From Ostrea edulis (Eukaryota), in the NCBI RefSeq assembly GCF_947568905.1, contig NC_079170.1, forward strand, positions 14,446,001 through 14,510,000: a DNA stretch of 64,000 bases, given 5' to 3'. Under the pieces are notes generated by a model. The model ran no database searches. It was not told where the DNA came from and worked only from the letters and a program-made list of their open reading frames with translations. Of this stretch, positions 42,397-64,000 are shown one piece after another. Numbering within the stretch: position 1 is the first letter of the stretch; each line of letters starts with the position of its first letter. Position numbers and translations under genes: made by a program.

Positions 42397-42930
42397 ATGT
42401 CTTGGTGGACGGGCGATATAAGGAATTACTCCAATGAGGAATTCCATGGTTATTTCAGTGATATCCGACTGGTTGCTTTGCGAACGTTGCCGAGAAAACC
42501 ACCAAAGGAGATATTGTCCCTTCTACGGACAACCTCTGTACACTCCCCTTACGCCCAGGCGGAGTCGGCACTCGCAACACCGTCCTCCATCCAAAGTACT
42601 CGCGAGTTTTCCTTTCTACCTGAAACTACAGAATTTGCTTATTCGCCCAACCATGACCTTCATCTTGATCTCGGAACACCGAGCACAACAGAAGAACGAT
42701 TCAGCTACTTTCCTGTCTCTGCCAGGACTCGCCTGCACAAATGGCAGCAACTCAACGATGATGAATCTCATAAATCAAGTGATGGCAGCAAGAAAAGTTC
42801 CATATTCCAGAAATTTGCTTATGGCATGGCGGTATATGTCGCCATTGCTCTATTAGCGCTTATCGTTATTGTTGGGATTTTAGTAACGTCTCTCAAAACA
42901 TTGGACAACAATATCAATGAAATGAAAAAA
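42397..42930 (+). CDS. Tandem M13 (neprilysin/ECE-like) pseudo-peptidase, exon 1: cytoplasmic tail plus type II TM helix
   Basis: accATG after an in-frame stop. 178 codons. Hydrophobic FAYGMAVYVAIALLALIVIVGILVTSL preceded by KK..K. Donor AAA|GTAAGT, phase 0. Confidence 0.85.
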
Positions 42931-43266
42931 GTAAGTATATCAAAATTCATTGATTTAATCAATCATAATGTAACATCAATCATATTGTGAATGGTGTGGA
43001 TTCAAAGAGCTAGGAGGAAATGAAAATAAATTGTTTTCTCAGCGTGTTCAGCATCATCGTTGGAAACTCGGGGCTGATTATAAACTGTGTGCCTTTCTCC
43101 CCCACACGATTCATTAATGAGCGTTACTTTCTCTTTCACTTAGTAGATGAAGCTGCATTTCTTTCTTTCGTCAATTTTTTTTTCATTACCCTGCAGGTTT
43201 TTCTCCATGTGAAAAGCCATCAAGTTGTGTTTCCCTTTTCCGTGCACGGTTCATTAAGCTCCGTTC

Positions 43267-44692
43267 CTTTCTCCCACACAGGGTTGACAAGCAATATTAC
43301 TTTCTCCCACACAGGGTTGACAAGCAATATCCCTTTCTCCCACACAGGGTTGACAAGCAATATTCCTTTCTACAGCATAGGGATGACAAGCAATATTCCT
43401 TTCTACAACACAGGGATGACAAGCAATATTCCTTTCTACAGCACAGGGTTGACAAGCAATATTCCTTTCTCTCACACAGGGTTGACAAGCAATATTCCTT
43501 TCTCCCACACAGGGATGACAAGCAATATTCCTTTCTCCCACACAGGGATGCCAAGCAATATTCTTTTCTACAGCACAGGGTTGAAAAGCAATATCCCTTT
43601 CTCCCACACAGGGTTGACAAGCAATATCCCTTTCTCCCACACAGGGATGACAAGCAATATTCCTTTCTCCAACACAGGGTTGACAAACAATATTTCTTTC
43701 TCCCATACAGGGTTGATAAGCAATATCCCTTTCTCCCACACAGGGTTGACAAGCAATATTCCTTTCTATCTCACAGGGTTGACAAGCAATATTCCTTCCT
43801 GCCACACAGGGTTGATAAGCAATATCCCTTTCTCCCACACAGGGTTGATAAGCAATATCCCTTTCTCCCACACAGGGTTGATAAGTAATATCCCTTTCTC
43901 CCACACAGGGTTGACAAGCAATATTCCTTTCTGTCTCACAGGGTTGACAAGCAATATTTCTTTCTGCCACACAGGGTTGATAAGCAATACCCCTTTCTCC
44001 CACACAGGGTTGATAAGCAATATCCCTTTCTCCCACACAGGGTTGATAAGTAATATCACTTTCTCCCACACAGGGTTGACAAGCAATATTCCTTTCTGTC
44101 TCACAGGGTTGACAAGCAATATTTCTTTCTGCCACACAGGGTTGATAAGCAATACCCCTTTCTCCCACACAGGGTTGATAAGCAATATCCCTTTCTCCCA
44201 CACAGGGTTGATAAGTAATATCACTTTCTCCCACACAGAGTTGACAAGCAATGTCCCTTTCCCCCCTACAGGGTTGACAAGCAATGTCCCTTTCCCCCAT
44301 ACAGGGTTGATAAGCAATGTCCCTTTCCCCCATACAGGGTTGATAAGCAATGTCCCTTTCTCCCACATAGGGTTGACAAGCAATATCCCTTTCTCCCATA
44401 CAGGGTTGACAAGCAATGTCCCTTTCCCCTATACAGGGTTGATAAGCAATGTCCCTTTCCCCCATACAGGGTTGATAAGCACTGTAACTTTCTCCCACAC
44501 AGGGTTGACAAGCAATATCCCTTTCTCCCATACAGGGTTGACAAGCAATGTCCCTTTCTCCCATACAGGGTTGATAAGCAATGTCCCTTTCCCCATTACA
44601 GGGTTGATAAGCAATGTCCCTTTCCCCCATACAGGGTTGATAAGCAATGTCCCTTTCCCCCATACAGGGTTGATAAGCAATATCCATTTCCC
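43267..44692. repeat. 33-bp minisatellite, about 43 copies, in intron 1 of the M13 gene
   Basis: Unit cacacagggttga(c/t)aagcaatatccctttctcc. Degenerate related units extend to about 43110 and 45130. Produces long stop-free frames on both strands. Confidence 0.95.
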
Positions 44693-45872
44693 AATGACAC
44701 TGTTGATTTTGCCGTATTCATTTCTCCACTGCAGGATTCGTTAAGCTACATTATTTTAATTTGTTCATCACAATGTTCCTTACTCCTTCACAAGTTAGAT
44801 TAAACTACACCCACCCCCAATATATTAAGCTGCATTTCTATCTCCAACACAAGGTTCAATAAGATGTGCTCTTTTCTCAACCATCTTGGTGATAAAGCTA
44901 CATTAATTTATCTGGCATGTTGTTGATTAAGTTACATTCATTTATCCATCACGTTGTTCATTAAGCTACATTTATTTATTGATCATATCGTTGATTAAGC
45001 TATATTCTTTTATCCATCATGCGGTTGATAATGCTGTGTTCCTTTAACCACCACGCGGATAATTAGAATGCATTCGTTCTTCTTCACACCGTGGATTCTG
45101 CTGTGTTCCTTAACAGACTGCGTTAATTTCACCATCATTCGGTTCATTATAATTATGCTGTGTTTTATTTTGTTTATTTACATTTTGTTTAGTTTTTTCT
45201 CACATCACTAATGTAAAAGTAATGTATTTTTTTCTCTATGTGTTGGGTTCAGCTACGTTCCCTTATTGATGACATAGCTGTATATAGCTTCTCTGTTTAC
45301 GATGTGGTTCATTGAACAGTGTTACGGTCTCGTTTGATAAAATTGCGTCCCAGATAATGTTACACCTACAACTATACATATAAACAGCGGTGATTTTTCG
45401 ACGACAGTTTAGCACGCATCTCAAAGAAACGTCATAAATGTTAGACGTTTTTGTCTATATTGTTTCAAAAGATATAATATAGAAACAATTTTATAGCGAA
45501 CTGAATTTCCGCTTGAATGTTGCAGATTGGTGGTATCTAGCTCATGGGGGAAATGATAACACAAACTTCCATGCACTTCAGTGTGCTGTGTAGGTTTTCA
45601 TAATATTTATAGACATATCTTTTAATCTTAAGCTTTATAAAGATGTATGTATCACACGAAATGCAAAGCAATAATAATGAATCTAAGCGTGAAATGGTTC
45701 GACAGAATATTATCGAATAGAACACCTTTTCTGGGTACTAACACTCGCTTATTGTTTCATTCAAACAGCGTCTTTTTTGTGTGATAAACTTGATAAGGAT
45801 GAGGCAGCAGGCTGAGTCTTTGTAAACCTTTACGTGTATCATGACTTATCTATGTCCTTTTTTATGTTTAAG

Positions 45873-46512
45873 GAGAATATGGCTCCATTAACAGGCAACG
45901 ACCCCCCTCTATATCCTACAACAACAACTAGTAGTGCAATATCAACTAAATTCCAACAACCAAAACCAAATTCTGAGGTAACAAACATGGCGACCACCAC
46001 TACATTAAAAACTACCAATCCAACACCAAAACCAACTGTTCCACAGCCAACAACATCAACAAAAACTGTAACTAAGGTCATCACGGAGTCACCAACGACA
46101 ACAAAAACATCATCAACAACACCATCTCCACCATCAACGATAGCAACTAGTACTACGAGGACGACGAGGACGCCAACAACAACGACAACAGCAAAACCTT
46201 TACCTACCACCACACAGACAACAACAAAGTCGACAACAACAGTAACGACGACACGGACAACCCAATCACCAATTACAACATCGCCACCTTCGACGGACCC
46301 AATGCTCTGTGACAGTTCATTCTGTAGTTCACTAGCGTACGAAATGTTGGGACGAATGAATACGTCGGTGGATCCATGTTCTGATTTTTACAGCTACTCT
46401 TGTGGGGCATGGATCTCAAGCAGGAGACTCTTACTCGAAATGAATGTCATAGAAACTGATAGGAATTCTGTGATGAGTGACGTCAAGTTAAACCTGAAAC
46501 AAAGACTGAAAG
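45873..46512 (+). CDS. M13 gene exon 2: Thr/Pro mucin-like stalk plus start of M13 module 1
   Basis: tttaAG|GAG in phase 0. About 150-aa T/P-rich stalk, then LCDSSFC..LGRMNTSVDPCSDFYSYSCGAW (M13 C....C...DPC.DFY...CG.W signature). Donor AAAG|GTAAAT, phase 1. Confidence 0.92.
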
Positions 46513-46770
46513 GTAAATACAATGGCTTACATTCTTTCAAGGATTTTTAAAAATCGTTTCTTCTGTTTCTTTTTTAATTCCAACACTGGTGCACGTCTTA
46601 TTTTTACCAATGGGAAGTAAAATGTCAGTATCCGCCATATTTGTTTAAGGATTATTTCAATGATTCCAAAGGAACGGGAGGGGTGTAGTATATATACTAC
46701 ATGTACTTCGTTTTCCACATAGTGGGTACTTGCTGCGTAATTTATTTCATTTAAATTATTTGTTTTTCAG

Positions 46771-46878
46771 ATATGCTAAGTGAAACAGTAATTTCAAGTG
46801 ATTCCGATTATATGAAGGCCATCAAACTTCATTTCCAGAGTTGTCTGGACTCAAATACCAGACCGGACAGCAGTCTAA
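46771..46878 (+). CDS. M13 module 1 exon (..KAIKLHFQSCLD..)
   Basis: 108 nt, phase 1/1, ttttcAG| ... |GTATGT. Matches the M13 K...fy.SCl motif. Confidence 0.85.
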
Positions 46879-47246
46879 GTATGTACAACATCCCAATGGA
46901 CTATGCTCTTCTCAATTTCCTTTTCATAAATATATGTAATTTAATATATTGAGACGCAATACATTATCGTGCAACATGTATTCTATTGTATGTAATTATC
47001 TGTAGATGGTAATAGTATTTCAAATTGGTAAACTTTGTGTAAGTATTTTTTTTCAATGTATGATGTTGACGAAAAAGAAAACTGTAATCGCGGTTTTTCC
47101 TCGATGTATGGGCATTTTTACAGTTTCAATAATTCAGATTGTTACATTTCTTACCTGATCAAGATAGAGAGCTGCTTATTCTTCCTAGGCAGCTGATCCT
47201 ACCTCTGGTGTGTCCAGAGATCCATGTTAACCCTGCTCTTAATAAG

Positions 47247-47505
47247 CCGTTCTTGGCAAACTGATTTGACTACGGATAACTCCGTTTACCTGATCAGGAT
47301 ATGGGGCTCACGGCGGGTGTGACCGGTCAACAGGGGATGCTTACTCTTCCTAGGCACCTGATCCCACCTCTCGTGTGTCCAGGGGTCCGTGTTTGCCCAA
47401 CTATCTATTTTGTATTGCTTGTAGGAGTTATGAGATTGATCACTGTTCGTTATCTTCACCTTGCATTTATGAGATTGATCACTGTTCGTTGTCTTTACTT
47501 TTCAT
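47247..47505 (+). mobile_element. Penelope-like element 3' end with partial terminal duplication
   Basis: Family 3' sequence ...gttatcttcaccttgcat followed by a second ttatgagattgatcactgttcgtt...ttttcat. Confidence 0.78.
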
Positions 47506-47509
47506 AAAG

Positions 47510-47685
47510 TAACCAAAGATGTGCAGAGTATGCTAGAGAATCTTGGGGTTGATCGCTCCATGACGTCAGTTTTGACACCATCCATGATGCAGTACTCCCT
47601 TTTCTCGGATTATGGCGCCTTTGGTTTCTTTAAGTATGAAATCACGGGAAAAGTTGTTAAAGATACAAAAAGGAGCATCCTTCAG
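47510..47685 (+). CDS. M13 module 1 exon (..MMQYSLFSDYGAFGFFKYEI..SILQ)
   Basis: 176 nt, phase 1/0. Same length as the paralogous exon 62213-62388. Confidence 0.8.
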
Positions 47686-48245
47686 GTTTGCACAAACGTT
47701 TGAGACCATAGTTCAAATTCATTATACATGTATACTTTTTTATGATTAATTCAACCGTAAAACCATCTAACATAATTGAATGTACCACTGTTATACCATG
47801 CAAACCATTTGATTCTAATAGTTCAACTTAATAAGTATTTGTAAATATCTGTTTCACTATAAACAAATTATCTACCTTTTGAACAATTTTATTTTTCGAA
47901 TATCTAATTACAAGCTCAGAATGATACTTTCTGGAAAAAGTGATATTTGAGAAATTCTTGCACATGTATATATGTAAATATTTTCAACATTTTAAATGTG
48001 TATTCCAAGTGGTCTCCCAACTAAATCTTGATTCTGAAAATTAGGTGTCTAATTTGAGAAATCCAACAATAAGGGTACTCGTTAAAACTTCTCCTAATTG
48101 TTGATAGGAATAAAATACTTTTCTATGCCACCAACCACTGAAACAATGGTAAATATCTACCGACTGGATGCTTTAATGTTGTACAACTGGTATAAATATG
48201 ACCATCAATGAACTCGTTCATGATATTTTCACACACTTTTCACAG

Positions 48246-48308
48246 CTTTCTCCACCTGATTTGTATTTACAACAGAGTGTGTATCTTCTCCCGTCTGAAG
48301 ACAACGAG
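48246..48308 (+). CDS. M13 module 1 exon (LSPPDLYLQQSVYLLPSEDNE)
   Basis: 63 nt, phase 0/0, cacAG| ... GAG|GTAAGG. Paralog at 62564-62626. Confidence 0.8.
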
Positions 48309-48384
48309 GTAAGGATATTACAAGAGTAAAGTTTAATGTTGCTAAATCAGATGGCTCTGAAGAAGGATTTCTTAATTTTGTATT

Positions 48385-48538
48385 AATCCTTGTAGGAGTT
48401 ATCCCACCTCTGGTGTGTCCAGGGGTCCGTGTTTGCCCAACTATCTATTTTGTATTGCTTGTAGGAGTTATGAGATTGATCACTGTTCGTTATCTTCACC
48501 TTGCATTGATCTCTGTTCGTTATTTTCACCTTTTCATC
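48385..48538 (+). mobile_element. Penelope-like element 3' end fragment
   Basis: Same family. Shares the variants gcttgtaggag and caccttgcat with the copy at 47247. Confidence 0.75.
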
Positions 48539-50053
48539 TGTTCACTGAAAGTATAGAACATCTGAAACAATGTTTGTCGTTAAAAATACGGTCCGCTTTG
48601 ATCCATTTTGCCCCCAAAGTTCAAGTTAAAAAAAACTTCAATGACGTCACAGTATTGCAAGAACATGGATATCGATTTAGACAGGGATCATTCAATAATT
48701 TCAAAATGTTTCTTGCTGACCCCACCATTTTCAATATCAAGCCACGGCACTGGCGTTGAATAATACATTGTTGGTTTGTTGGATAAAGATGACATTCCTT
48801 GCTTCTCCTCCTCCCTTACCAAAACTGAACCACGATGACGAGTCCGTATGATTTAACTGCCACCTGTCATATCATCTCAGCTTCTGACTTTCCGTGTCGA
48901 CGATTAGAATGAATTGTTTCATGATGTGGTTATTTTCGTACTCACCGCCTGTCATTGAAGAACACTGGTACAGGTCAAAAACCTATCGCCCATGTTCACC
49001 CATGAACAAGAACGATAATCCACGAATATGGCATAGAGGTCAGAAAGACAATGCATTTGAAAATTAGAACTACGTGTATCACATTAGGTCATACACCCTT
49101 GTTTTGCATGTTGTCGTAAATGCACGTGAATTGACTGTTTCGTATATCATGATTCGCACGTGTTGCTATTTACTGAAAGTACAACGTAGCTTGGCATCTG
49201 ATCGGACCTCTCGACTTGGGACATCCAACAGATTTGATATTCTACAAGATCTCGATCTGTCACACATGATCTACTCTTATCTACATCCACAGCATCGTAG
49301 TAGAACACGGTTGTGAGTCCCCGCATGGATACCCGTGGGTAATCAATGATACATCCACAGATAATCTGCATGTTCTTGAGAGGGTACATGTATATATTAC
49401 CTCAAACGTATACAGCACGATTTTAAATCAAGGTAGATAAGATTATGGTTTTGGGGTGCAGAGAGTATATTTTGGAATATTTTAGTGAAAGTATTAATCG
49501 AAGAAACGCATTGGTATTTTACCCCAATGTGTTAGGTACAATTTCAAATGAAGTTTGACGTTCTTTTGACAGATTCAGTAGGAATGACCTTTTTGGCACG
49601 TTTTAATGGACATTTTATTGCTAGAAATATTTCCTTAGCATACTTTAAAATGATTCATGGTCAATAAAGGTGTAGCTACAATTCCTCTGTAGACTTTCTG
49701 GCGAGTTCTGAAGGAATACGAGAGAGTATGAAGAAGGAAATTAGTTGAAACATAAAGAAACATTGCATCATCATGAGTAGATATATCTGCTATCAAACTC
49801 TGGGTCTTTTGGTTACGTTGATATTGTTGAAGACAACTTTACATGACCATGAAACAATTTTAAAACTACTCACTTTTCTAAATATTCCCGACAGGGACGT
49901 AAAACAATATTCAATCAATCAATTAATCAATCATTACTTTTCTGAACGTATTGTAACTTCATTGTCACCACTTATAGCGTCACCATGACGACACATCAAG
50001 TTGAACATGCCCAAATGTGTACGTTCTATGAGGAGATCGGCGGAAGTGATTAT

Positions 50054-50310
50054 TATTTGCTTGGTTCACGTTCTTTCCAGACTTTTTTCACTCCCATTGA
50101 GGCGTTGTAGGTGAAGTGCCACAGAAGAAGACCGCGACACTGGACCTCCATTCCAAGGTCTTATCCGAAAAAACCATGAATTAGCGAAGGAACAATCACA
50201 ACCTATGTTTACGTCTTAGGTTTGACACGGCCATATCATGAGCGGGGCCTGACCTTACAAGCTCCCTGTCACAAAGCGAACTTTCTACTACTGAGCTACC
50301 GCGACCGGTC
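50054..50310 (-). mobile_element. tRNA-derived SINE, degenerate
   Basis: Minus-strand head gaccggtcgcggtagctcagtagtaga (A-box) with a decayed B-box. 3' part gtggcacttcacctaca..gagtgaaaaa resembles the tail region of the SINE at 9615. Confidence 0.65.
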
Positions 50311-51061
50311 GGCTGAAGTGGTCGGGTAGATATGAATAAGCGTTGTTTCATGCAATTCCGCAAATTAAAAAAATGGTTGACAGTAAAACAGACGCAAATC
50401 ATATTGAGATGATCAGATGAGGAAAGGAAAACTGTGTAAAACAGTACTATTTCCGCCATATGTCTTTAGTGACACAGCACCATTACCGTGATGTCCTTGA
50501 CAGTGACCTTGGGTACTCCTTGTAGAGATTGTGATGGAAAATTACAATAGTTTTTTCATAATCCGAAGTAGTCGTAAGATATTATGTCAAATTTACCGCT
50601 TCCTACTGCATTGTCCACTAAATATCATGATATATGGAACAGCGGGGGTTCATGGTGAATAGTAGCCTTAACACGAATGTGCCAAGTTTCGATGGCTCAA
50701 GTATAAGTTCTTTGCAGTCAGAAAATTCTTATCATTCGCATCCATCGGAAAGACAGCATTCCATTGATTTGAATTAATAGTGGATATACAGTTAAAGTAT
50801 ATATTTAACAACAAATTGTTAGACTATTGATCCACATTTTTAAAGATTGAGTTGTACTTTGGGAATGAAATTTGAGAAGTAATTTTTTTTTTCATTTGGT
50901 TAACACGTTTTTATTAAACCAGAGCTATATTCGTATTCTTCATCCTAGAATTACATGGGAGATACTGCCAACGAAAAGTACACTAACTTAAAATCAATAA
51001 GTACTACAGGTGTATGTACAATAATATAATGGTAATGATACAAATGTTCAATAACTTTCAG

Positions 51062-51140
51062 ATTGCCAGGCGGTATTTTGATAGATTAGTCCCGTTGATT
51101 CAGCGTTTCAACAGTAATCTTAGACCGGTTTCTAACCTTG
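51062..51140 (+). CDS. M13 module 1 exon (IARRYFDRLVPLIQRFNSNLRPVSNL)
   Basis: 79 nt, phase 0/1, tttcAG| ... G|GTAAGT. Aligns with the paralog at 62873-62948. Confidence 0.8.
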
Positions 51141-51441: not shown

Positions 51442-51509
51442 ATAATATAGACGGAGAGCTGCGACTGAAAGTTGCAGAAGTCTTCGAATTTGAAAGACAA
51501 ATATCACAG
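51442..51509 (+). CDS. M13 module 1 exon (DNIDGELRLKVAEVFEFERQISQ)
   Basis: 68 nt, phase 1/0. Matches the M13 v..FE..LA motif. Confidence 0.82.
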
Positions 51510-51669: not shown

Positions 51670-52402
51670 GCTATTCGTGTTGCAAAGTCTTCTAATGAAG
51701 AGAAAGTATCATACTCAGTCAGTGCACTACAAAAGAATCTCCCAAACATTGACTGGACCGTAGCTCTACCGCAGCAACAGTTGTCTTATGACACACCTGT
51801 TCAACTCAACCACCCTAGCTATTTTTCATCTCTGAATGGCATGCTTGGCAGGAACCAACAATCTACACTTGTCATGTACCTTTATATTCGCGCCATTTTA
51901 ACAGGAATCCTTCCATCTGCGCCAAAATCAACTCGCCAATTCATGGATAGTATGTACGATACAGAGACTGCACAAGAATACACGTCAGTAGACTGCTTGG
52001 ATAGTACGCTGAAACTACTTCCAGAGGAAGTGCTTGTGGAGTATACAAGAACATATTCCCAAGATATCAAAAACGTACGGGACTATCTCTCCTCTTTATT
52101 TAGAAATCTAACGGATGAAAGCATCCAGTCTTTTTCTTCTTACCCTGGTTACAGCGACGAAACCAAATTCAGAATGTCCGGGATTTTGTCATCTCTCAAT
52201 CTAGTGAGTGCGCCGATACCAGTGATTCCCTGGACGGTCGTTCTATCCACAAATAACGATGTGCTTCATTTATTTAGAGCTAATTTTGCCCATCAGGCAC
52301 ATGCTTCTCGGTTGATGAACAGAATAGGAGAAGTATATACCGTTCCCGATATACCATGGTATGATGTAGATATCGTGTATGATAAAGAAATCAACACTCT
52401 AG
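51670..52402 (+). CDS. M13 module 1 large exon (LQKNLPNIDW ... DCLDST ... YDVDIVYDKEINTL)
   Basis: 733 nt open, phase 0/1. Contains the P.idW motif, a conserved Cys, and VDIVY at the VNAFY position. Confidence 0.88.
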
Positions 52403-52818: not shown

Positions 52819-53310
52819 CATGAAAGGTGAAGATAACGAACAGTGATCAATCTCATAAGTCCTATAAGGAATACAAAGTAGAGAGTTGGGCAAACACGGA
52901 CCCCTGGACATACCAGGGATGGGACCAGGTGCCTAGGAGGAGTAAGCATCCCCTGTCGACCGGTCACATCCGCCGTGAGCTCTATACCTTGATCAGGTAA
53001 ATCAGTTATCCCTTGTAAACATCAGTGTGCCAAGAACGTGAAAGGCCTAAAAATCGGTATGAAAGAAGTCAGACAACATTTGACCCAATGATAGGTTATA
53101 CCGTATTGACAAGATCAATACACCTACCATATAATTTGCGAAATATTGACTTTAAACGAGAGTGTTGAATCCCATCTAACATCATTTTGTTTGTCAGTAG
53201 CCTATCTCGATTTAAAAACTGATCATAAGCAGAACAAGCTCTTGCGTATCGAATCAGTTGAAAGATATAAACACCATATGCAGGTGATAATGAAATATTT
53301 CTAATATGAT
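52819..53310 (-). mobile_element. Penelope-like element, RT C-terminus plus 3' end
   Basis: Translation NISLSPAYGVYIFQLIRYARACSAYDQFLNR..LLTNK..SRLKS.FRK.YGR, followed by the family 3' UTR. Confidence 0.82.
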
Positions 53311-53501: not shown

Positions 53502-53609
53502 GAATGGCGTATGGAATCCTAAGTTGGAAAACAAACCTGAAACCAGAGTTTCCCTTCATGTCCACTGTTGGTCTACTTCTATCAGAGAGAGTTACAGACG
53601 CAATTTATG
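53502..53609 (+). CDS. M13 module 1 active-site exon with the zinc motif replaced
   Basis: ttttaAG| GMAYGILSWKTNLKPEFPFMSTVGLLLSERVTDAIY G|GTATGT. 108 nt, phase 1/1. Aligns to FPAGIL....GGIGxVIGHEITHGFD. Confidence 0.78.
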
Positions 53610-55625: not shown

Positions 55626-55735
55626 GGTCACTCGACATTCAGTCTGCGGTCGATGGTTACTGGAGTGATGGTTCTTTGAGGCATTTTCAGGACAAACGCG
55701 ACTGCTTCATGAATCAACTGTTTGAGAAAAGAACT
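55626..55735 (+). CDS. M13 module 1 exon (..DGYWSDGSLRHFQDKRDCFMNQL..)
   Basis: Phase 1/0, tgtAG| ... ACT|GTAAGT (alternative phase-0 end at 55759). Matches the WW....F.....C...Q motif. Confidence 0.8.
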
Positions 55736-55899: not shown

Positions 55900-55948
<49 letters not shown>

Positions 55949-55951
<3 letters not shown>

Positions 55952-56525
55952 TGATCACCTGCTTTAATGCCGCACATCGCCAAAAAGTTCAAAGTCCCGT
56001 TTTCCTCGCTATGTAAAAACCCGTTATATTGCCATCCCCTGCATACCACCATCCGCCAACCTATTTACAGGTACTATTTGGTCAATTACCATTATAATCA
56101 CCACCGCTAATTATCGCCAATCAACGGCAGGACAATTTCAGTGAGCAGGCTTAGGCAATTATCCGCTATTAGTTCTCAAGGTATCAAAGTTTGGAGCAGA
56201 TAATAAGTTATGTAAATCATATTCAACTGAGTTCAAATATGCAGTATTGTTTTTGAAATCCAAGTATGGCGGATACACCGAAGTCTAAGCGTGTTGTACA
56301 TAAAACTAAAACTGGAAATCATTAAATACCCCTACCATTACGAGTCATTTACGATCACTGGACGCTGGGATTACCCAGGCATTCAAAGCACGATGTAGTA
56401 GATAAAATTTGATTGATTTCTTATGACAGCTGTACATATACCCCCTCCCCCGATATAATGCCACCCCCGTTATAATGCCAAAATTGCCGAGGTACAAATG
56501 TTGGCGTTATAACGGGGGATCACTG
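55949..56525. mobile_element. Tc1/mariner-like MITE in a (TA)n tract
   Basis: TIR CAGTGATCACCTGCTTTAATGCC / GGCGTTATAACGGGGGATCACTG, flanked by TA on both sides. Confidence 0.75.
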
Positions 56526-56535
56526 TATATATTTA

Positions 56536-56580
56536 AATCACTAACGCTTTCTGGATTTTAACATCCATCCTCAGGTGAAT
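56536..56580 (-). ncRNA. Minimal type I hammerhead ribozyme motif
   Basis: AUUCAC-CUGAGGA-UGGAU(GUUAAA)AUCCA-GAAA-GCGUUA-GUGAUU. Intact core, 5-bp stem II, stem I UCAC/GUGA, self-complementary stem III, NUH triplet UUA. Confidence 0.65.
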
Positions 56581-56734
56581 ACATGTACCTTTAAATGCTG
56601 AACACGTCTCAATATAAACTCCTCAAATAACAACAAACAACCAAATAGATTCATTTTTGATGAGTACTTGTTTATTCAATGCATATCCGAATAGATAATT
56701 TTATGTTTTGTTTCCCAAAATTCATGCCTCTAAT

Positions 56735-58426
56735 TTCACATTTGGCAACCCAACTTACACTCCAGATTCCCTTTCCACAATGAGTCTTTAATCTTCAAAA
56801 CCACGTGTCAGTTTAAAACACATTTAATATCCCAATTAATGGAGGGAATGAATATGAGTTACCAAACGTATACTGAATTCCAAAACTTTACAAAACCCTT
56901 ACGAAAAGAGATAAATTGCAGGATCCAGCAAATGATATACCAAGCCCATATCTTTACTCCTCACCAAAACATCAACTGCTATAAAGGAGAAACCTAAGAC
57001 TTATTTTGCTAGAAATGGTGTAAATCGAACGTGGATTCTGATGGTTTTCAAAGAACGTTTAGTAAAACCTTTCCAAAAACAACATCATCAAAGCGTTAAA
57101 TGTTTCCACGCTTCACACCATGTCATGATAAATTAGAGACTAGGGGCATCTTTTTGGCATCATAGAGAGATGCGTCTTGAATAAAAATGGAACTCGGAAA
57201 AATTAACATTTGTTATGAGTCATTCAAAATTAATTTGTTAAAAACCATTCAGATTCTACGAACAAGTACTCTGAAATTGATAGTAAAAAGATGTTGGATT
57301 TCCTCACTGACAATATCTACATACATTGTAGTTTTGGCGCAATCAGTTCTTTCAACAGGCTATTGAATTCAAGCGGACACGAATTGCGCTCCTTTAATAG
57401 CTGATCTATTTTTGCATTCTTATGAGGCAAAATGTACATAAAAACTCCTACATACATCTATATCCCCGTGAAATCGAACTGAACGACACCATAGAATCTT
57501 CTATATCTGTTTCGTATTTGGATGTATTAATGAACATAGATGTCATCGGCACACTAACAACTCAACTTTATGACAGACTTTATCTTCTCCGTCGTCAACT
57601 GGCTATATCTATGTAGAAATAGTCCATTATCACCTGCTTATGAAAGGTGAAGATAACCAACAGTGGTCAATCTCATAACTCCTATAAGCAATACAAAATA
57701 GATAGTTGGGCAAAAACGGACCTCTGAACACACCAGAGGTGGGATCAGGTGCCTAGGAGGAAGAGGCACCCTCTGCTGATTAGTCAAACCCGTCGTGAGC
57801 CCTATATCTTGATCAGGTAAATGGAGTTATCCGTAGTCAAAATCAGTGTGTCAAGAACGGTCTAACAATCGGTATGAAACACATCAGACAGCATTTGACC
57901 CAATGACAGGTTGTATTGGCAAACTAGATCGTTATAACGATCATAGAATTAGCGAAATGCTGACTTTAATCGAGACTGTTGAAATCCCTGAACCACTTGT
58001 TTGTCAGTAGCTTGCTTTTGTCTCTCAACTGATTTGATATGCGAGGGCATGTTATACGTATGATCAGTTTTTGAATAGAGACAATACTGGAAAATAAGTG
58101 AATGTTACAGGAGTTACAAGTATCTTGTTTAAAGTCAGCATTTCCAAAATTCTTATACAATTTATCTAATACAATCTCCCATTAGGTCGAATGCATTCTA
58201 ACGTTTTCATACCAATGGTTACGCCATTCTTTATATACTGATTTTTATTACGGATTACTCCGATTATCTGACCAAGATATAAAGGTTCAACAAGGGGATG
58301 TTTACCTTCCTAGACACCTGACCGACCTCTGATGTTTCCATGGATCTGTGTTCGTCCTATTCTGAGTGTTGTATTCTTTATGAGATTTATGAGATTGTTC
58401 ACTGTACCTTATCGTCATCATTTCAT
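56735..58426 (+). mobile_element. Old Penelope-like RT remnant interrupted by a younger antisense copy (57640-58014)
   Basis: Plus-strand remnants GNPTYT..NEYELP..IPKL..NCAPLIADLFL.SYEA..QLYD..PLSPAY | insert | SQLI.YARAC..DQFLNR, then the 3' end ...atttcat. Confidence 0.75.
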
Positions 58427-58782
58427 GTTACAAATTCACGGTGATTTATGTAGACAAAACCACAAAATAAAATTAAAAATCTATCCACAAAGCATTTGGT
58501 CATCTAGAAATTCATGAAGTTTAAACTTTTTCAATCTTTTAATGAACATGTCCCACTTTTAATGATTTAAGTAGTTAATATACAAGTTGCAAACTTTGAT
58601 TTAGAACAAGAGGACATTTTCCCCCTATGTTTGTACATTTACCTTTATTCAGAAGAAGTGGAACATGTTGCGCTACGAAAGACAATTGCACTACTAAATA
58701 AACAACATTTTGAAAATAGATATTATTTGACCTATGATTAATGTGTATATGTACTTATTATGAGTTGCCTTTCATTTATTAG

Positions 58783-58848
58783 GAGACTGGTATATACAAA
58801 ACGAAGCAAGTGATGTCAGGACATGCTGGACTATACATAGTAATGCAG
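58783..58848 (+). CDS. M13 module 1 exon (ETGIYKTKQVMSGHAGLYIVMQ; GENIAD region)
   Basis: 66 nt, phase 0/0, ttattAG| ... CAG|GTATGG. Aligns to G..TLGENIADNGGL. Confidence 0.7.
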
Positions 58849-59399
58849 GTATGGCTGACATATTCAATTAGAGTTGTTCAAATGCTTATGAGAACATACA
58901 CATATAAATGAAAGAAGGCGTTGATGCAAATAGAAGTACAAAATATAATACTACAATACATATGCATGTATTGTAAGCATATTGTATTATCAATCACTTG
59001 TATTTCGCGAGATTTTATTTCATTAATCCTAATTACTCTTACCAAATTTTTATTTGTAAGACAGTTAATTTTCCTCATACCATAAAAATAAGGTTTTAAT
59101 GGCTATATCTTAATAAATCCATAGTAATGAACCTTTTTTTTAATTAAGCGTTAGCGGAAAATCATTTCCCGACAGAATAATTATGGGAGCAGTAACAAAA
59201 ATAATTTACAGTCACAACGGAAAAGAAATAAGGACAAAAATAATGTATGCACGAGACTGAGGCAACATTTGGACAGGTTAAAACCCTCATTGCATGTCAT
59301 ATATTTCTTTATTCCAATGGTATCTCCAAATACTTAACGTTACAATCTAAACATGGCCTTGGCCATTCTCAATGACTTTCAACAATATCGCGTGTATAT

Positions 59400-59568
59400 A
59401 CATGATCAAGATATAGGGCTCACGAAGAGTGTGGCCGGTCGACAAGGGGTGCTTACTCCTGATCCCTGGTATATCCAGGGGTCCGTGTTTGCTCAACTCT
59501 CTATTTTGTATTCCTTTTGGGAATTGATGAGTGAGATTGATCACTGTGCGTTATATTCGCCTCTTATA
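59400..59568 (+). mobile_element. Penelope-like element 3' end fragment
   Basis: gatatagggctcacg...ccaggggtccgtgtttgc...gagattgatcactg, same family. Confidence 0.7.
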
Positions 59569-60051
59569 TAATGAAGCCGATCTGAGCTCGTGTAAGTCAT
59601 TAAGATCTCCCATTGTACAACCGCGCCTCTTTCATGGTAAATATGACGACATTCAAAGGTGTCAAAGTCAGACGGCACGGTGCGTGCACTCGTTACATGT
59701 AATTCTATTTTCAATTAGCGTAGAAAGTTTAGTGTATACCCATGCAATGATCTCTCCACATTTAAGGAACAATGTTCCCATGGAATGTGAAAGAGGTTTA
59801 TACTAATTAATGTAATATCTAATAAAGCATTTGATGCACATTATTTACGGAGAAAATGCTTGTCTTAATTACACATAACGCATGCGATAGATTCACTTCT
59901 TGTTTAATGATGAAGAGAACGGACACATGCAGCTTCATTAGAGTTTGTACTTTCGGTGTCTTTGGATGTGTTGTCATTTTTTAGCTTTGTCAGTTTTTTA
60001 ATCTCGGAGAGTATTACTGCATTATTTTCCTATGTTATCGATGTTTTACAG

Positions 60052-60150
60052 GAACAAAAACGTTTGCTTCAGAATAGAATGATCCAAAGATACCTATTCC
60101 CATTCCTGTCCCTTCATTCTGAACAGCTGTTTTACCTGTCGATGACTCAG
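60052..60150 (+). CDS. M13 module 1 exon (..LFPFLSLHSEQLFYLSMTQ)
   Basis: 99 nt, phase 0/0. Matches LPGL...EQLFF..fAQ. Confidence 0.85.
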
Positions 60151-60342
60151 GTACGTCAACGCAGTCCTTCTCAGATGTTGTATGGTTTCCTACTAATTAC
60201 GTTATCGGTACAGCAATAACCGAGAAGTACATCAAAGAGATGTATTAATAAAACGTAAAAAAAAACAAACAAAAAAAAAAAAAAAAAAACGTTTCATTTA
60301 TCATTTACTTGTTATTCTACATAAATATTTATAATGTTACAG

Positions 60343-60392
60343 GAGTTGTGCAAAATGAATGAAGAAGGAGACGTTTTATCCAACAAATTGAG
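60343..60392 (+). CDS. M13 module 1 exon (ELCKMNEEGDVLSNKLR)
   Basis: 50 nt, phase 0/2. Corresponds to the WC...D.HSP...R segment. Confidence 0.78.
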
Positions 60393-60590
60393 GTATTCTG
60401 ATTCTAGACAGACGCCTTTCATTGATATAAAATTACAAATACGAGTTATAGATAGTTAAAAGAATATGCATGTATACCAGTATATTGATTTTAAATATGA
60501 TAACGTCGGTTTTAAATGAATTGCTTCAAACGGTGTATAGAAAATTTGAGATCGATGGTTTAAATTTTTATATTTCAATCATTCTTCCAG

Positions 60591-61588
60591 ATGGAACACA
60601 GTTCTGATGAACGACGTGACTTTTGCAAAGGCCTTTGAATGTCCTCTTGGTTCCCACATGAACCCACCCTATAAATGTCATCTTTTCCAGCAAACGAATT
60701 ATACAATTCCACCGACGACACCGGCACTTCCTACAACTACAACAACAACAATCACCACACAAGTTACAACTCAACGAACAACGACAACATCTCCAAAACC
60801 GACGACAACGACCACTCCAAAACCAACGACGACAACGACTACTCCAAAACCGACAACTACTACTCCAAGGCCGACGACAACGACCACTTCAAAACCGACG
60901 ACAACGACTACTCCAAAACCGACAACTACTACTACTACTCCAAGGCCGACGACAACGACCACTTCAAAACCGACGACAACGACTACTCCAAAACCGACGA
61001 CAACGACTACTACTCCAAAACCAACGACAACGACAACAACTCCAAAACCGACGACAACGACAACAACTCCAAAACCGACGACAACAACGACTACTCCAAA
61101 ACCGACGACAACAACGACTACTCCAAAACCGACGACAACGACTACTCTAAAACCGACGACGACAATAACGACTACTCCAAAACCGACGACTACTCCAAAA
61201 CCGACGACGACAACTCCAAAACCGACAACAACAACTACTACTTCAATACCAACAACTCTAATTCCATCCACAACAACAACCACGACGTCAAACCCAATCC
61301 CGACGACAACAACTCAACAGAGTGTAGTCTCTACTACTATAAATACTCCGTCTACAACTTCCGATGTCAATCAACTACAAACCTGTCAATCAGAATTCTG
61401 TTTCTCTTTAGCTTTTCTGATTTCTTCCCGCTCGGACGAATATGTAGATCCTTGCAACGATTTTTACCAGTATGCATGCGGTGGATGGGTATCTGGAAGA
61501 GAAGCTTTATTGGCTTTAAACTTTTACAACGAGTCTAGAAACTCTATCATAGAAGATGTACACTTTAATTTCAGACAAGAATTAAAAG
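60591..61588 (+). CDS. Fusion exon: C-terminus of M13 module 1, (PKPTTTTT)n linker, start of M13 module 2
   Basis: cttccAG|A, phase 2. FAKAFECPLGSHMNPPYKCHLF continues stop-free through a ~230-aa T/P linker into CQSEFC..YVDPCNDFYQYACGGW. Donor AAAG|GTATGT, phase 1. Confidence 0.92.
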
Positions 61589-61913
61589 GTATGTTTTTTT
61601 CATTATCATACTCGATAATAAACTGGGGAAAATGTCAAGGCTATGGCTATGAGAGATATTCAGTGGTCAGATGACATCATGCGCGTAATTAAAACCATTC
61701 CATGGTATACCCTTTTCTAACACTCTCTCCAGATTTTCCCCTCAGTATTTAGAGGTAGCTGTTTATAACATAATCCAGTTTTTGCAAGAATACTAAAAAC
61801 AGCACTATTTTTGTTAATTGTATTCAATCCCCATGCTATCGCTTTAATCAAAATCGTTGTCAATACCACTTTGACAAAAGTATCATGGTGAAATCTCGCT
61901 CTTCCCTCTTCAG

Positions 61914-62021
61914 CAATGGTAGAAAGAAACACAACCGATGACGACAGTGAATATCTACAACTGATAAAACTTCATTACCAGAGTTGTCTATTGTCCAATA
62001 ACCCACAGCAAGTGCAATCAG
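61914..62021 (+). CDS. M13 module 2 exon (..LIKLHYQSCLLS..)
   Basis: 108 nt, phase 1/1. Paralog of 46771-46878. Confidence 0.85.
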
Positions 62022-62212
62022 GTGAAGGACAGCTACATGTATAAACTGTTCAAGTGCAAATTAACGGCTAAATAAGCAACCCACTATAGCTTCCCACAAT
62101 TTTATAGTGGACAGTATTGCACTGTATGCAATATCTTTTGATGTGTTTTTAAAATGAGTAATAATCATTCTCGGTATGCATTTTTGAAACATGCTCTACT
62201 TATTGTTGTCAG

Positions 62213-62388
62213 TCACAAACGATATGCAGCTTCTGTTGGAAATATTGGAAATGGGGAATGACCTGAAATCCTACATGGGGGCAGCCAACATGCACTTAGT
62301 AGTGAGTGCGGACATGGGTGGTTCGGGATTATTCGACTACAGGGTAATACAAACGGCAGTGGACAACACAACGACAAACATATTGCAG
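62213..62388 (+). CDS. M13 module 2 exon (..DMGGSGLFDYRV..NILQ)
   Basis: 176 nt, phase 1/0. Paralog of 47510-47685. Confidence 0.82.
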
Positions 62389-62390
62389 GT

Positions 62391-62424
<34 letters not shown>

Positions 62425-62563
62425 ATTTTTCATATATCATGCTATCTATCACATGTTGTGGTTTCATTGTTATGTATGTGTGTTACATTGCAAAGTTTAT
62501 GATGAGAATGCTGGTAACAGGGGACGTAATAATTCACTAACCATTCCTACATCACTATTTCAG

Positions 62564-62626
62564 CTCTCTCCATCGAATTTATATCTAAAGGATGATGCTT
62601 ATGTAGCGCCATTTGAAAGCAATAAG
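62564..62626 (+). CDS. M13 module 2 exon (LSPSNLYLKDDAYVAPFESNK)
   Basis: 63 nt, phase 0/0, donor AAG|GTGAGT. Confidence 0.82.
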
Positions 62627-62872
62627 GTGAGTGTAGTGCAACATGCGTAACATACACGTAAACGTGAGCATAAAAAGAAAGTTACGTACTAAACACGTTG
62701 GAGGTGACATTTTCTCTTTGATATTATTTCAAGCACTTGTTGTCTCTGCAATGAGAAGGAATTTAATTTTGACTTCAAATAATGCAGCCGAAATTGATGG
62801 AGCATACAATGAGAGTGACGCTCGATTATATACAAGACAAAGTGTGGGTTAACATATGTGTGTGTTTTGCAG

Positions 62873-62948
62873 ATAGCACAGAAGTACATTGAGAGAATTG
62901 TGCCTGTTTTGCAGAAAGTTAATCTGAATTTACGCCCACAAAATGCAG
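62873..62948 (+). CDS. M13 module 2 exon (IAQKYIERIVPVLQKVNLNLRPQNA)
   Basis: 76 nt, phase 0/1. Confidence 0.8.
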
Positions 62949-63119
62949 GTTTGGTTTGCATATACTGGAATATGACATGAATATGAAACATCATCTGTAT
63001 CAAAGTTATCGATGCATCCCAAAATGAATTAGACTATATGCATGGCCAATTTTCTATGTTTCGTTTCTTGTTTGTGAGCGAAAATTCCTGAAATTGTTGG
63101 GTTTTTTTATTTTTGGTAG

Positions 63120-63190
63120 ATGACAACATCACGGAAGCTCTGATTGAGAGACTGGAGGATGTGTTCGCGTTTGAGCAAGAATTGGCCAAG
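63120..63190 (+). CDS. M13 module 2 exon (DDNITEALIERLEDVFAFEQELAK)
   Basis: 71 nt, phase 1/0, donor AAG|GTTAGT. Confidence 0.85.
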
Positions 63191-63552
63191 GTTAGTGTTA
63201 CCTTAGATTGTGACAGACCTCGTGGAAGAGAAGCCGTGATACTTGTTTTATTTGAAATTCACATATAAAAGCCGTAAAAGATATCCACAACTATGCTTCA
63301 TCTTTTTTTGTTTTACCCCTGCGTCATTTTTATCATCTGCCCCCCCCCTTCTTTTTTTACCCCTGCACTAATTTTTACCCCTGCCCTATTTTCACCCTTG
63401 TCCTATTTATGATTACGTATACTTTATATGACTCTGTACATGGATGATCTTCCTAAGTCAAAACATCCCACAGAACGAGTTTGAAGTTTATCCACACATT
63501 TCAATAATCACACTGTCTTTGATTATCCCATTTACATATGTCTTTCTTTCAG

Positions 63553-64000
63553 GCTATTCAGTTCGGCGGATTTGAACCTGACATTGATATCAAAACTGAA
63601 GAACTGGAACAAAGATATCCAAACATTGACTGGGTGTACATGTTACCCTATCAACAGACCTTTTCCGAAACTCCCATTCGAATCGTTAATCCCTCCTTCT
63701 TTCAGACCCTCGACCAGTTATTTAACAGTACAAACGAGGATGTCATCTCCATGTACATTTACACCAAAGCTGTCCTCACAGCTCTTCTGCCTTACGCCCC
63801 ACTGGCAATACGAAAGAGTATGGATGGTATCTACAATAACGATACCAGTGAGCCGTTTTCTACTGGCCATTGTCTGGACTCTACACTTTCCATGTTAAAA
63901 GACGAATTCCACGAGGAATACAGAATAAAATACAGAGATCAAATCGACTTTCAAACATCCTACTATTCAAACCTATCTACAACCATAAAGGAAACATTAA
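63553..64000 (+). CDS. M13 module 2 large exon, truncated by the window end
   Basis: ctttcAG|AIQFGG...LEQRYPNIDWVYMLP...MYIYTKAVLTALLPYAP...GHCLDSTL..., open to base 64000. Paralog of 51670-52402. Confidence 0.88.

What the first reader, a model, noticed from the sequence alone, without database searches (positions are those of the whole stretch)
42397..64000. Tandem multi-domain pseudo-neprilysin: one membrane-anchored chain with at least two M13 modules separated by mucin linkers
Twenty GT-AG exons join in consistent phase into more than 1590 codons, open at the window end. Architecture: ~140-aa cytoplasmic tail / TM / Thr-Pro stalk / full M13 fold with the ten usual Cys / ~230-aa (PKPTTTTT)n linker / second M13 fold. 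Characterised M13 members (neprilysin, ECE, PHEX, Kell, ECEL1) have one domain and end at the KC.(V/I)W motif. Module 1 has lost its catalytic residues, so the product looks like a beads-on-a-string surface binder, decoy or adhesion protein built from peptidase cavities (inference). I do not know of a described protein with this architecture, but could not run a search.
Basis: partly seen in the sequence, partly recalled or inferred. Interest (0 to 1): 0.9.

Follow-up and report, generated by a model that had tools for sequence, protein, structure and literature searches.

The report
Two-module membrane-anchored pseudo-neprilysin gene
A bivalve gene encodes one membrane-anchored protein in which two complete-looking but catalytically dead neprilysin-type (M13) peptidase domains are strung together by a sugar-bearing Thr/Pro linker, an arrangement I could not find described or annotated for this otherwise single-domain family.

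Summary
I rebuilt the gene independently as 19 GT-AG exons (42397-64000, + strand). They splice in consistent phase into 1583 codons with no stop, still open at the window end. The order is a 141-aa tail, one TM helix, a Thr/Pro stalk, a full M13 module with exactly 10 Cys, a 230-aa (PKPTTTTT)n linker, and a second M13 module.

The key evidence needs no splicing. One uninterrupted exon (60591-61588) runs from the C-terminal end of module 1 (KCHLFQ) through the linker into the N-terminal start of module 2. Module 2 repeats module 1's exon lengths and phases, and the two are 35% identical. No second tail/TM exon exists in the window.

Both modules lack the zinc site: HExxH reads ERVTD in module 1 and KEIAS in module 2.

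The relatives are a small, very divergent bivalve clade of pseudo-neprilysins (Pecten, Mactra, Mercenaria, annotated "neprilysin-like"). All are single-module and share the cytoplasmic tail motifs. No tandem M13 protein turned up in 1.84 billion representative proteins or in the literature.

No transcript evidence was available, and the number of modules beyond two is unknown. Function is inferred: a non-catalytic, multivalent surface peptide binder or receptor. I rate it a new variant of a known kind, of moderate interest.

The parts
42397..42930 (+). Exon 1: start codon, 141-aa cytoplasmic tail and TM helix. Donor AA|GTAAGT, phase 0.
   Evidence: ORF; junction. The tail is 48% identical to the N-terminus of Mactra P0013 and aligns with an unannotated Pecten exon (A2). 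Conserved tail motifs are GY(F/I)xDIR..A.R(T/S)LPRxP and FxYFPxSAR.
42820..42888 (+). The only transmembrane segment (aa 142-164)
   Evidence: Kyte-Doolittle 19-residue maximum of 3.1 at aa 145. There is no other hydrophobic peak in the 1583 aa.
45873..46512 (+). Exon 2: Thr/Pro/Ser stalk plus the start of module 1 M13_N (the first four Cys)
   Evidence: Pfam M13_N positions 1-38. 47% identical to 61390-61605.
46771..46878 (+). Exon 3 (108 nt)
   Evidence: Paralogous to 61914-62021.
47510..47685 (+). Exon 4 (176 nt)
   Evidence: Paralogous to 62213-62388.
48246..48308 (+). Exon 5 (63 nt)
   Evidence: Paralogous to 62564-62626.
51062..51140 (+). Exon 6 (79 nt)
   Evidence: Paralogous to 62873-62948 (shared pattern IAxxYxxRxVPxxQxxNxNLRP).
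51442..51509 (+). Exon 7 (68 nt)
   Evidence: Paralogous to 63120-63190.
51670..52402 (+). Exon 8 (733 nt): the second half of M13_N up to the NAY/FY position (reads DIVY)
   Evidence: Pfam PF05649 positions 207-364, E 5.7e-11. Exon boundaries. Used as the query for the representative search.
53502..53609 (+). Exon 9 (108 nt): the pseudo-active site. The HExxH position reads ERVTD at 53585-53599.
   Evidence: Junctions. Residues mapped by transitive alignment from module 1 to the family profile to neprilysin.
55626..55735 (+). Exon 10 (110 nt)
60010..60150 (+). Exon 11. The ENIAD position has no Glu or Asp. The acceptor is the least certain boundary: 59944 and 60052 are also in phase.
60343..60392 (+). 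Exon 12 (50 nt)
60591..61588 (+). Exon 13, the junction exon. It holds the module 1 C-terminus (to KCHLFQ, 60690), the 230-aa linker (60688-61377) and the module 2 M13_N start (from 61378).
   Evidence: One continuous ORF. The linker contains 24/27-nt repeats, about 18 copies, at 60791-61239. Independent Logan contig L003 covers the end of the linker and module 2.
61914..62021 (+). Module 2 exon 3' (108 nt)
62213..62388 (+). Module 2 exon 4' (176 nt)
62564..62626 (+). Module 2 exon 5' (63 nt)
62873..62948 (+). Module 2 exon 6' (76 nt)
63120..63190 (+). Module 2 exon 7' (71 nt)
63553..64000 (+). Module 2 exon 8', cut by the window end. It continues in L003 to a phase-1 donor and is followed by a 108-nt exon 9'.
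   Evidence: Logan proteins P0019 and P0003 are 99-100% identical and carry Pfam M13_N.

Best explanation
The locus is a real protein-coding gene of a bivalve. It encodes a type II (N-terminus inside the cell) surface glycoprotein. The chain has a 141-aa cytoplasmic tail with conserved docking-type motifs, one TM helix and a mucin-like Thr/Pro stalk. A complete but zinc-less M13 (neprilysin-fold) module follows, then a 230-aa mucin linker of PKPTTTTT repeats, and then at least one more zinc-less M13 module.

Origin (inferred). The gene arose by in-frame tandem duplication of the phase-0/phase-0 block 'exon 2 to last codon' of a single-module ancestor. As a result, the old last exon now reads straight into a copy of exon 2.

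Mechanism (inferred). Neither module can hydrolyse peptides. The conserved disulfide framework and full-length fold argue that the closed M13 cavity is kept as a binding chamber. The protein would then act as a multivalent, non-catalytic binder of small peptides or other small ligands. It would hold these on extended O-glycosylated stalks above the cell surface, either sequestering them or reporting them inward through the conserved tail.

What is shown and what is inferred. Shown: the exon chain, the junction ORF, the homology, the loss of catalytic residues, and the single-module state of relatives. Inferred: a single mature transcript, O-glycosylation, ligand binding and signalling. The confidence given (0.75) is for the encoded two-module pseudo-peptidase chain; for the peptide-binder function alone it is about 0.35.
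For: Gene model
- Nineteen phase-consistent exons give 1583 codons with no stop.
- The junction is one ORF.
- There is no second copy of the tail/TM exon anywhere in the window, so module 2 has no membrane anchor or start of its own.

M13 identity
- Pfam M13_N hits exon 8 at 5.7e-11.
- Module 1 aligns to the family profile at positions 8-605 of 615, 256 bits.
- That profile hits neprilysin at 4e-18 and ECE-1 at 8e-18 in the PDB.
- The relatives carry PF05649 plus PF01431.

Constraint on both copies
- The modules are 35% identical over 514 aa, with all exon lengths and phases kept.
- All Cys sit at homologous positions and nowhere else.
- Contigs from other individuals show no exon indels, against 22 indel columns in introns.

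Dead active sites
- HEITH reads ERVTD in module 1 and KEIAS in module 2.
- The third zinc ligand Glu (ENIAD) reads Leu, and the Asp reads Val.
- NAFY reads DIVY.

Conserved tail
- The tail aligns with Pecten and Mactra (A2).

Single-module relatives
- The Pecten locus L001 has one module, a stop shortly after the C-terminal Cys motif, and no further M13 match in the 10 kb fetched downstream.
- Mactra P0013 ends at CVVFQ.
Against: - No transcript, cDNA or proteomic evidence could be reached, so one mature mRNA spanning both modules is not demonstrated.
- An acceptor-like site (catcttttccag|CAA, exon start 60691, phase 0) sits exactly at the module 1/linker boundary. It could let exon 1 splice directly to the linker plus module 2.
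- The C-terminal part of module 2, and any further modules, lie beyond the window. All three same-species contigs stop at the same point near 65.1 kb.
- Ligand binding is pure inference. The structure prediction failed (pLDDT 41), so the cavity could not be examined.
Confidence: 0.75

Rival explanations
1. The modules are used separately. The locus behaves as two alternative cassettes behind one first exon, or as two transcription units. Most mature proteins would then carry a single M13 module, for example exon 1 spliced to the acceptor-like site at 60691 to give tail-TM-linker-module 2. The two-module chain would be a minor isoform or not made at all.
For: The acceptor-like sequence sits exactly at the boundary and is in the same phase (0) as the exon 1 donor. 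All known relatives are single-module. The linker resembles the stalk that precedes module 1.
Against: Any transcript that includes module 1 has no stop codon before module 2, so it must read on. There is no second promoter-proximal tail/TM exon. No polyadenylation or termination evidence was found.
Confidence: 0.12
2. It is an assembly artefact. Two paralogous genes were collapsed or mis-joined inside the Thr/Pro repeat array (60.79-61.24 kb).
For: The array is 450 bp of near-identical 24/27-nt units. Short-read contigs break inside it: L003 starts at about 61164.
Against: About 100 nt of unique Thr-rich coding sequence follows KCHLFQ with no stop before the array begins, and relatives terminate at that point. 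The frame is kept on both sides of the array. No E1-like exon exists for a second gene. L003 independently confirms the end of the array running into module 2.
Confidence: 0.03
3. It is a decaying duplicate. The read-through is a recent accident, and module 2 (or the whole gene) is a non-functional relic.
For: The family is already catalytically dead. Function is unknown. There are no expression data.
Against: The duplication is old (35% identity). It predates the split from the sources of P0002 and P0004 on the exon 8 tree. Even so, every exon, splice site, phase and Cys is intact in both copies. Polymorphism in exons shows no indels.
Confidence: 0.05

Closest known systems
Bivalve 'neprilysin-like' pseudo-peptidases: Pecten maximus XP_033746306/08 (neprilysin-2-like), Mactra antiquata KAL4227004 (hypothetical protein), Mercenaria mercenaria XP_053377913/16 (neprilysin-1-like)
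   Same: - They belong to the same divergent clade: they are the only full-length hits to exon 8 among 1.84e9 representatives.
- They have the same Thr-rich stalk in front of M13_N and the same large exon 8.
- They have lost the zinc ligands in the same way.
- They share the cytoplasmic tail motifs and the TM helix. In Pecten these are found in an unannotated upstream exon.
   Different: - All have one module, followed by a stop at or shortly after the C-terminal Cys motif.
- The window gene reads through into a linker and a second module.
- Identity to the window modules is only about 25%.
Drosophila neprilysin-like (Nepl) proteins (PMC8223033)
   Same: They are M13 fold proteins lacking the four activity motifs (HExxH, ENIAD, NAY/FY, CxxW). 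They are proposed to bind and sequester peptides rather than cleave them.
   Different: Nepl proteins are single-module and mostly secreted through a signal peptide. Tandemly arrayed Nepl genes remain separate genes. They have no mucin stalks or conserved cytoplasmic tail. They represent an independent loss of activity in a different phylum.
Neprilysin / ECE-1 (characterised M13 ectoenzymes; PDB 1dmt, 3dwb)
   Same: They share type II topology, the two-part M13_N plus M13 fold, and the conserved cysteine framework. The family profile matches them at 4e-18 and 8e-18.
   Different: They are active zinc enzymes with one catalytic module that ends at CxxW. Here no zinc ligands remain, there are two modules, and there are long mucin segments.
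Tandem peptidase-unit proteins: somatic ACE (two M2 units) and carboxypeptidase D (three M14 units, the last inactive). From my own knowledge, not tested here.
   Same: They show the same evolutionary route: duplication of a whole peptidase unit inside one membrane-anchored chain, with inactive units tolerated.
   Different: They belong to unrelated folds and families. At least one unit stays active. They have short linkers rather than mucin linkers, and type I rather than type II topology.

Membership tests
Peptidase family M13 (fold level: Pfam PF05649 Peptidase_M13_N + PF01431 Peptidase_M13) | N-terminal M13_N domain | tested here: met
   Exon 8 scores 42.9 bits against the 32-bit cutoff, E 5.7e-11, positions 207-364. 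Exons 2 and 13 match positions 1-38 and 1-15. Module 2's exon 8' (P0019) carries PF05649.
Peptidase family M13 (fold level: Pfam PF05649 Peptidase_M13_N + PF01431 Peptidase_M13) | C-terminal Peptidase_M13 domain | tested here: met
   This is indirect, because the spliced protein could not be handed to Pfam. Module 1 aligns through to position 605 of 615 of a profile of relatives. Those relatives hit PF01431 (P0007 at 6.6e-08, P0013 at 5.3e-07). The profile aligns to the neprilysin C-terminus through to the final Cys motif. For module 2 only the first exon of this domain was seen.
Peptidase family M13 (fold level: Pfam PF05649 Peptidase_M13_N + PF01431 Peptidase_M13) | Conserved set of ten cysteines | tested here: met
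   Module 1 has exactly 10 Cys. Module 2 has 6 Cys at homologous positions in the part available. There are none elsewhere in the chain.
Peptidase family M13 (fold level: Pfam PF05649 Peptidase_M13_N + PF01431 Peptidase_M13) | Type II membrane topology (N-terminal tail, single TM helix) | tested here: met
   There is a single hydropathy peak at aa 142-164, after a 141-aa tail with no signal peptide-like start. This rests on hydropathy only.
Peptidase family M13 (fold level: Pfam PF05649 Peptidase_M13_N + PF01431 Peptidase_M13) | Three-dimensional M13 fold | tested here: inconclusive
   An AlphaFold2 model of the Mactra relative with a 4-sequence alignment gave mean pLDDT 40.7 and pTM 0.31. That is too poor for a fold search.
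Catalytically active neprilysins (Nep, criteria of PMC8223033) | HExxH zinc-binding motif | tested here: not met
   Module 1 reads ERVTD and module 2 reads KEIAS at the aligned position.
Catalytically active neprilysins (Nep, criteria of PMC8223033) | ENIAD(xGG) third zinc ligand motif | tested here: not met
   In module 1 the Glu position reads Leu and the Asp position reads Val. This part of module 2 lies outside the available sequence.
Catalytically active neprilysins (Nep, criteria of PMC8223033) | NAY/FY substrate-binding motif and C-terminal CxxW | tested here: not met
   Module 1 reads DIVY for NAFY and CHLF for CxxW, and it is not at the C-terminus.
Neprilysin-like pseudo-peptidases (non-catalytic M13 homologues) | M13 fold retained with the activity motifs lost | tested here: met
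   See the rows above. The same holds for the Pecten, Mactra and Mercenaria relatives in the profile consensus.
Neprilysin-like pseudo-peptidases (non-catalytic M13 homologues) | Single M13 module per chain (true of all described members I know of) | tested here: not met
   Two modules sit in one ORF chain. This is the point of difference.

The most novel reading that the evidence does not exclude
This would be the founding example of a multivalent 'beads-on-a-string' pseudo-peptidase receptor. Several closed M13 cavities, possibly more than two beyond the window, would be displayed on mucin stalks from one type II anchor with a conserved signalling tail. The array would have been generated by duplication of a phase-0/phase-0 exon block. 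The same symmetry could allow exon 1 to choose among modules by alternative splicing, giving one gene a repertoire of surface peptide binders.
Probability: 0.2. Interest if true: 0.7.

Novelty: new variant of a known kind. Interest (0 to 1): 0.45.

Why it matters
M13 peptidases (neprilysin, ECE, PHEX, Kell, ECEL1 and the insect Nep/Nepl proteins) are textbook single-domain ectoenzymes. Inactive homologues are common but poorly understood.

A chain carrying two or more dead M13 cavities, kept intact long after the duplication, argues that the cavity itself has a selected non-catalytic use. It also argues that valency matters for that use. This gives pseudo-enzyme biology a natural construct for asking what inactive neprilysins bind.

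The work also defines a previously unremarked bivalve clade with a conserved cytoplasmic tail. Current annotations truncate it in Pecten or label it only as 'neprilysin-like'.

The practical impact is limited until expression and ligands are known.

Tried and rejected
- **Exon 8 alone against the PDB (phmmer).** It gave only chance interleukin-2 matches at E 0.1-1. The module is too diverged for single-sequence detection, and a family profile was needed.
- **Pfam on short exons.** It gave nothing, as expected for 50-75 aa pieces.
- **The search for homologous proteins, three searches.** The Pecten module found only itself. The C-terminal side of the junction exon shared no words with any candidate. 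The M13_N side scored nothing. The tool's length window (at most 1.75 times the query) could not have seen a protein of about 1850 aa or more, so these blanks say little about tandem relatives.
- **AlphaFold2 on the Mactra module.** With a 4-sequence alignment it gave pLDDT 40.7. I made no fold search because the model is meaningless.
- **Walking 3' of the window.** The three same-species Logan contigs (L003-L005) all end at about 65.1 kb, presumably at a dispersed repeat. Only exon 8' and exon 9' could be added.
- **P0008 contig.** No DNA was available.
- **The 574-aa ORF at 43020-44744.** I rejected it as coding. It is a 33-bp minisatellite of 43 copies that is open on both strands and lies in intron 1.
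- **P0015.** This is a repeated-peptide protein matching 'YPN(I/V)DW'. I rejected it as a relative because it has only a 28-aa match and no M13 domain.
- **The spliced protein.** Whole-protein tests were therefore done locally against profiles built from retrieved relatives.

Full report
**Observation**

The window is AT-rich eukaryotic DNA (GC 30-40%, no N). I used open reading pieces, similarity between the two modules, a profile of retrieved relatives, and an enumeration of phase-compatible GT-AG junctions.

The result is 19 exons:

| Exon | Coordinates |
|---|---|
| E1 | 42397-42930 |
| E2 | 45873-46512 |
| E3 | 46771-46878 |
| E4 | 47510-47685 |
| E5 | 48246-48308 |
| E6 | 51062-51140 |
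| E7 | 51442-51509 |
| E8 | 51670-52402 |
| E9 | 53502-53609 |
| E10 | 55626-55735 |
| E11 | 60010-60150 |
| E12 | 60343-60392 |
| E13 | 60591-61588 |
| E3' | 61914-62021 |
| E4' | 62213-62388 |
| E5' | 62564-62626 |
| E6' | 62873-62948 |
| E7' | 63120-63190 |
| E8' | 63553-64000 |

They splice into 1583 codons without a stop and are open at the window end. The only soft boundary is the E11 acceptor, where 59944 and 60052 are also in phase. The 60010 acceptor fits the family profile with the fewest gaps.

**Anatomy**

- The tail is aa 1-141.
- The single hydrophobic helix is aa 142-164.
- The stalk is aa 165-322, 60% Thr/Ser/Pro.
- Module 1 is aa 323-969 and has exactly ten Cys.
- The linker is aa 970-1199, 79% Thr/Ser/Pro. 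It is encoded by about 18 copies of a 24/27-nt unit at 60791-61239.
- Module 2 starts at aa 1200 and has six Cys at the positions homologous to the first six of module 1.
- There are no Cys elsewhere in the chain.

**The junction**

The central claim does not depend on any splice prediction. The ORF 60607-61674 reads from the last M13 helix and Cys motif of module 1 (ending KCHLFQ), through the repeats, into the canonical M13_N start of module 2. Relatives stop at or shortly after that point: Mactra P0013 ends ...CVVFQ and Mercenaria P0011 ends ...CSLFL. In Pecten the stop comes 11 residues after the motif.

The modules are true paralogues. They are 35% identical over 514 aa, E 5e-119, and their exon lengths match one for one.

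No second copy of the tail/TM exon exists anywhere in the 64 kb. Module 2 therefore has no start or anchor of its own.

**Independent data**

Logan contigs from three sequencing runs (L002-L005) are 99-100% identical to the window.

L003 starts inside the linker and runs through module 2 to about 65.1 kb. It confirms the linker-to-module-2 continuity. It also adds the rest of exon 8' (phase-1 donor) and a 108-nt exon 9' with the same length and phases as exon 9.

Differences between individuals include 22 indel columns in introns and none in exons. The substitution counts are too small to say more.

**What it is**

- Exon 8 passes the Pfam Peptidase_M13_N threshold.
- A search of 1.84 billion representative proteins with exon 8 found only 15 matches.
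- Most of the 15 are single-exon ORFs from short genomic contigs. The full-length or spliced hits are Pecten maximus 'neprilysin-2-like', Mactra antiquata 'hypothetical protein', Mercenaria mercenaria 'neprilysin-1-like', and one unnamed 614-aa product on a 2.8-kb ENA contig.
- Three of these four carry both PF05649 and PF01431. The ENA product (P0014) carries PF05649 only.
- A profile of these four (A1) aligns module 1 from position 8 to 605 of 615 at 256 bits. It aligns the available part of module 2 to position 462.
- The same profile finds neprilysin (4e-18) and ECE-1 (8e-18) in the PDB.

This is therefore a small, very divergent, bivalve-restricted branch of the M13 family, as far as these data go.

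**Dead active sites**

I chained the profile-to-neprilysin alignment with the module-to-profile alignments.

| Neprilysin feature | Module 1 | Module 2 |
|---|---|---|
| HEITH | ERVTD | KEIAS |
| Glu of ENIAD | Leu | outside available sequence |
| Asp of ENIAD | Val | outside available sequence |
| NAFY | DIVY | not mapped |
| CxxW | CHLF, internal rather than terminal | outside available sequence |

One substrate-binding Arg (the 'NFR' arginine) appears to be kept in module 1; I read this by eye from the printed alignments, not from a dedicated computation. The relatives also lack the His ligands (profile consensus). By the four-motif criterion used for Drosophila Nep versus Nepl proteins (PMC8223033), both modules are neprilysin-like pseudo-enzymes.

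**Relatives are single-module**

The Pecten locus (L001, 53 kb) contains one module, a stop shortly after the C-terminal Cys motif, and no further M13 similarity in the 10 kb fetched downstream.

The Pecten locus does contain an unannotated exon 5 kb upstream of the annotated start. That exon encodes the same tail motifs and a TM helix with a phase-0 donor, so the family architecture is tail, TM, stalk and module.

The tail motifs are conserved across the window species, Pecten and Mactra. They are GY(F/I)xDIR..A.R(T/S)LPRxP and FxYFPxSAR. The first fits the class I SH3-ligand pattern RxxPxxP. That reading rests on my own knowledge and was not tested.

**Age and origin of the duplication**

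On a tree of exon 8 sequences, module 1, module 2 and three anonymous fragments (P0002, P0004, P0008) form a clade with 97/98 support. That clade excludes Pecten, Mactra and Mercenaria. Module 1 groups with P0002 and P0004 rather than with module 2.

The duplication is therefore younger than the split from those three genera. It is older than the split from the unknown sources of P0002 and P0004.

The exon 1 donor, the exon 2 acceptor and the last family codon are all in phase 0. The block 'exon 2 to last codon' is therefore a symmetric cassette whose tandem duplication is automatically in frame.

The DNA at the boundary reads catcttttccag|CAA, an acceptor-like site. This fits a breakpoint at an ancestral exon 2 acceptor. 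It also leaves open a module-2-only isoform. Both ideas are inference.

**Surroundings**

The 42 kb upstream holds no convincing coding sequence and no tRNA. It is full of mini- and macrosatellites. The introns carry dispersed repeats.

**Mechanism**

Shown:
- A membrane-anchored chain is encoded.
- It has two M13 folds.
- It has no zinc site.
- Cysteines and exon structure have been conserved since an old duplication.

Inferred:
- The Thr/Pro segments are O-glycosylated rigid spacers.
- The closed M13 chamber is retained as a binding site for small peptides or ligands.
- Duplication increases valency or ligand range.
- The conserved tail couples binding to trafficking or signalling.

My confidence is about 0.75-0.8 that the genome truly encodes the two-module chain. 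It is about 0.35 for the peptide-binder function.

**Novelty**

- No hit in the representative library had two matched stretches from a real relative, and none was longer than 992 aa.
- Three word-indexed searches gave nothing further. Their length window limits what they could see.
- Literature searches for tandem or duplicated M13 domains returned nothing.
- I could not query domain-architecture databases. Unpublished predicted tandem M13 proteins elsewhere are therefore not excluded.

I rate this a new variant of a known kind, namely pseudo-neprilysins. It is of moderate interest until transcripts and ligands are known.

Noticed in passing
window 43266-44690 (intron 1): A 33-bp minisatellite of about 43 copies at 90% identity. 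It is open in several frames on both strands (574-aa and 477-aa ORFs), which mimics a repeat protein. It is not part of the gene model.
   Followed up: partly
window 47361-47470, 48401-48510, 58320-58429; also 52820-53002 and 57640-57822: Two families of dispersed repeats sit inside introns of the gene. One pair is 98% identical and another 85%. A related reading appears at about 30.3-30.7 kb on the minus strand. These are probably short mobile elements.
   Followed up: no
L001:4714-5199 (Pecten maximus LR736844.1): The NCBI model of the Pecten relative (XP_033746306/08) starts inside the Thr-rich stalk. An unannotated upstream exon encodes the conserved cytoplasmic tail and the TM helix with a phase-0 donor. 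The annotated protein therefore appears to be truncated at its N-terminus.
   Followed up: partly
P0015 (578 aa, from the representative search): This protein is made of about nine repeats of a roughly 55-aa unit. Each unit contains KKKYPNVDW and ends in GKR or KR sites, like a multi-copy peptide precursor. It matches only the YPNIDW stretch of exon 8. Its Pfam hits are spurious repeat artefacts, and its source was not looked up.
   Followed up: no
L006 (ENA ERZ23498523 scaffold, 9.8 kb): [quoted passage not shown] It has a (TTTTP[EK]P)n stalk, an M13_N start and an exon 8-like exon. It is probably animal DNA in a 'microbial' metagenome.
   Followed up: partly
window 1-42000: The upstream 42 kb has no convincing gene or tRNA, but it is dense in tandem arrays. 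Examples are a 52-bp unit x10.6 at 2376-2940, a 28-bp unit x20 at 4740-5293, a 435-bp unit x2.4 at 24890-25946, and a 26-bp unit x9 at 38420-38654.
   Followed up: partly
about 1.1 kb beyond the window end (L003, L004 and L005 3' ends): Three independent short-read contigs of the same species all stop at the same position, about 65.1 kb in window-equivalent coordinates. This suggests a dispersed repeat in the intron after exon 9' of module 2.
   Followed up: no
window 60791-61239 compared with L003:1-200: The end of the linker repeat differs between the window and contig L003 in several residues. This hints that the Thr/Pro array varies between individuals.
   Followed up: no
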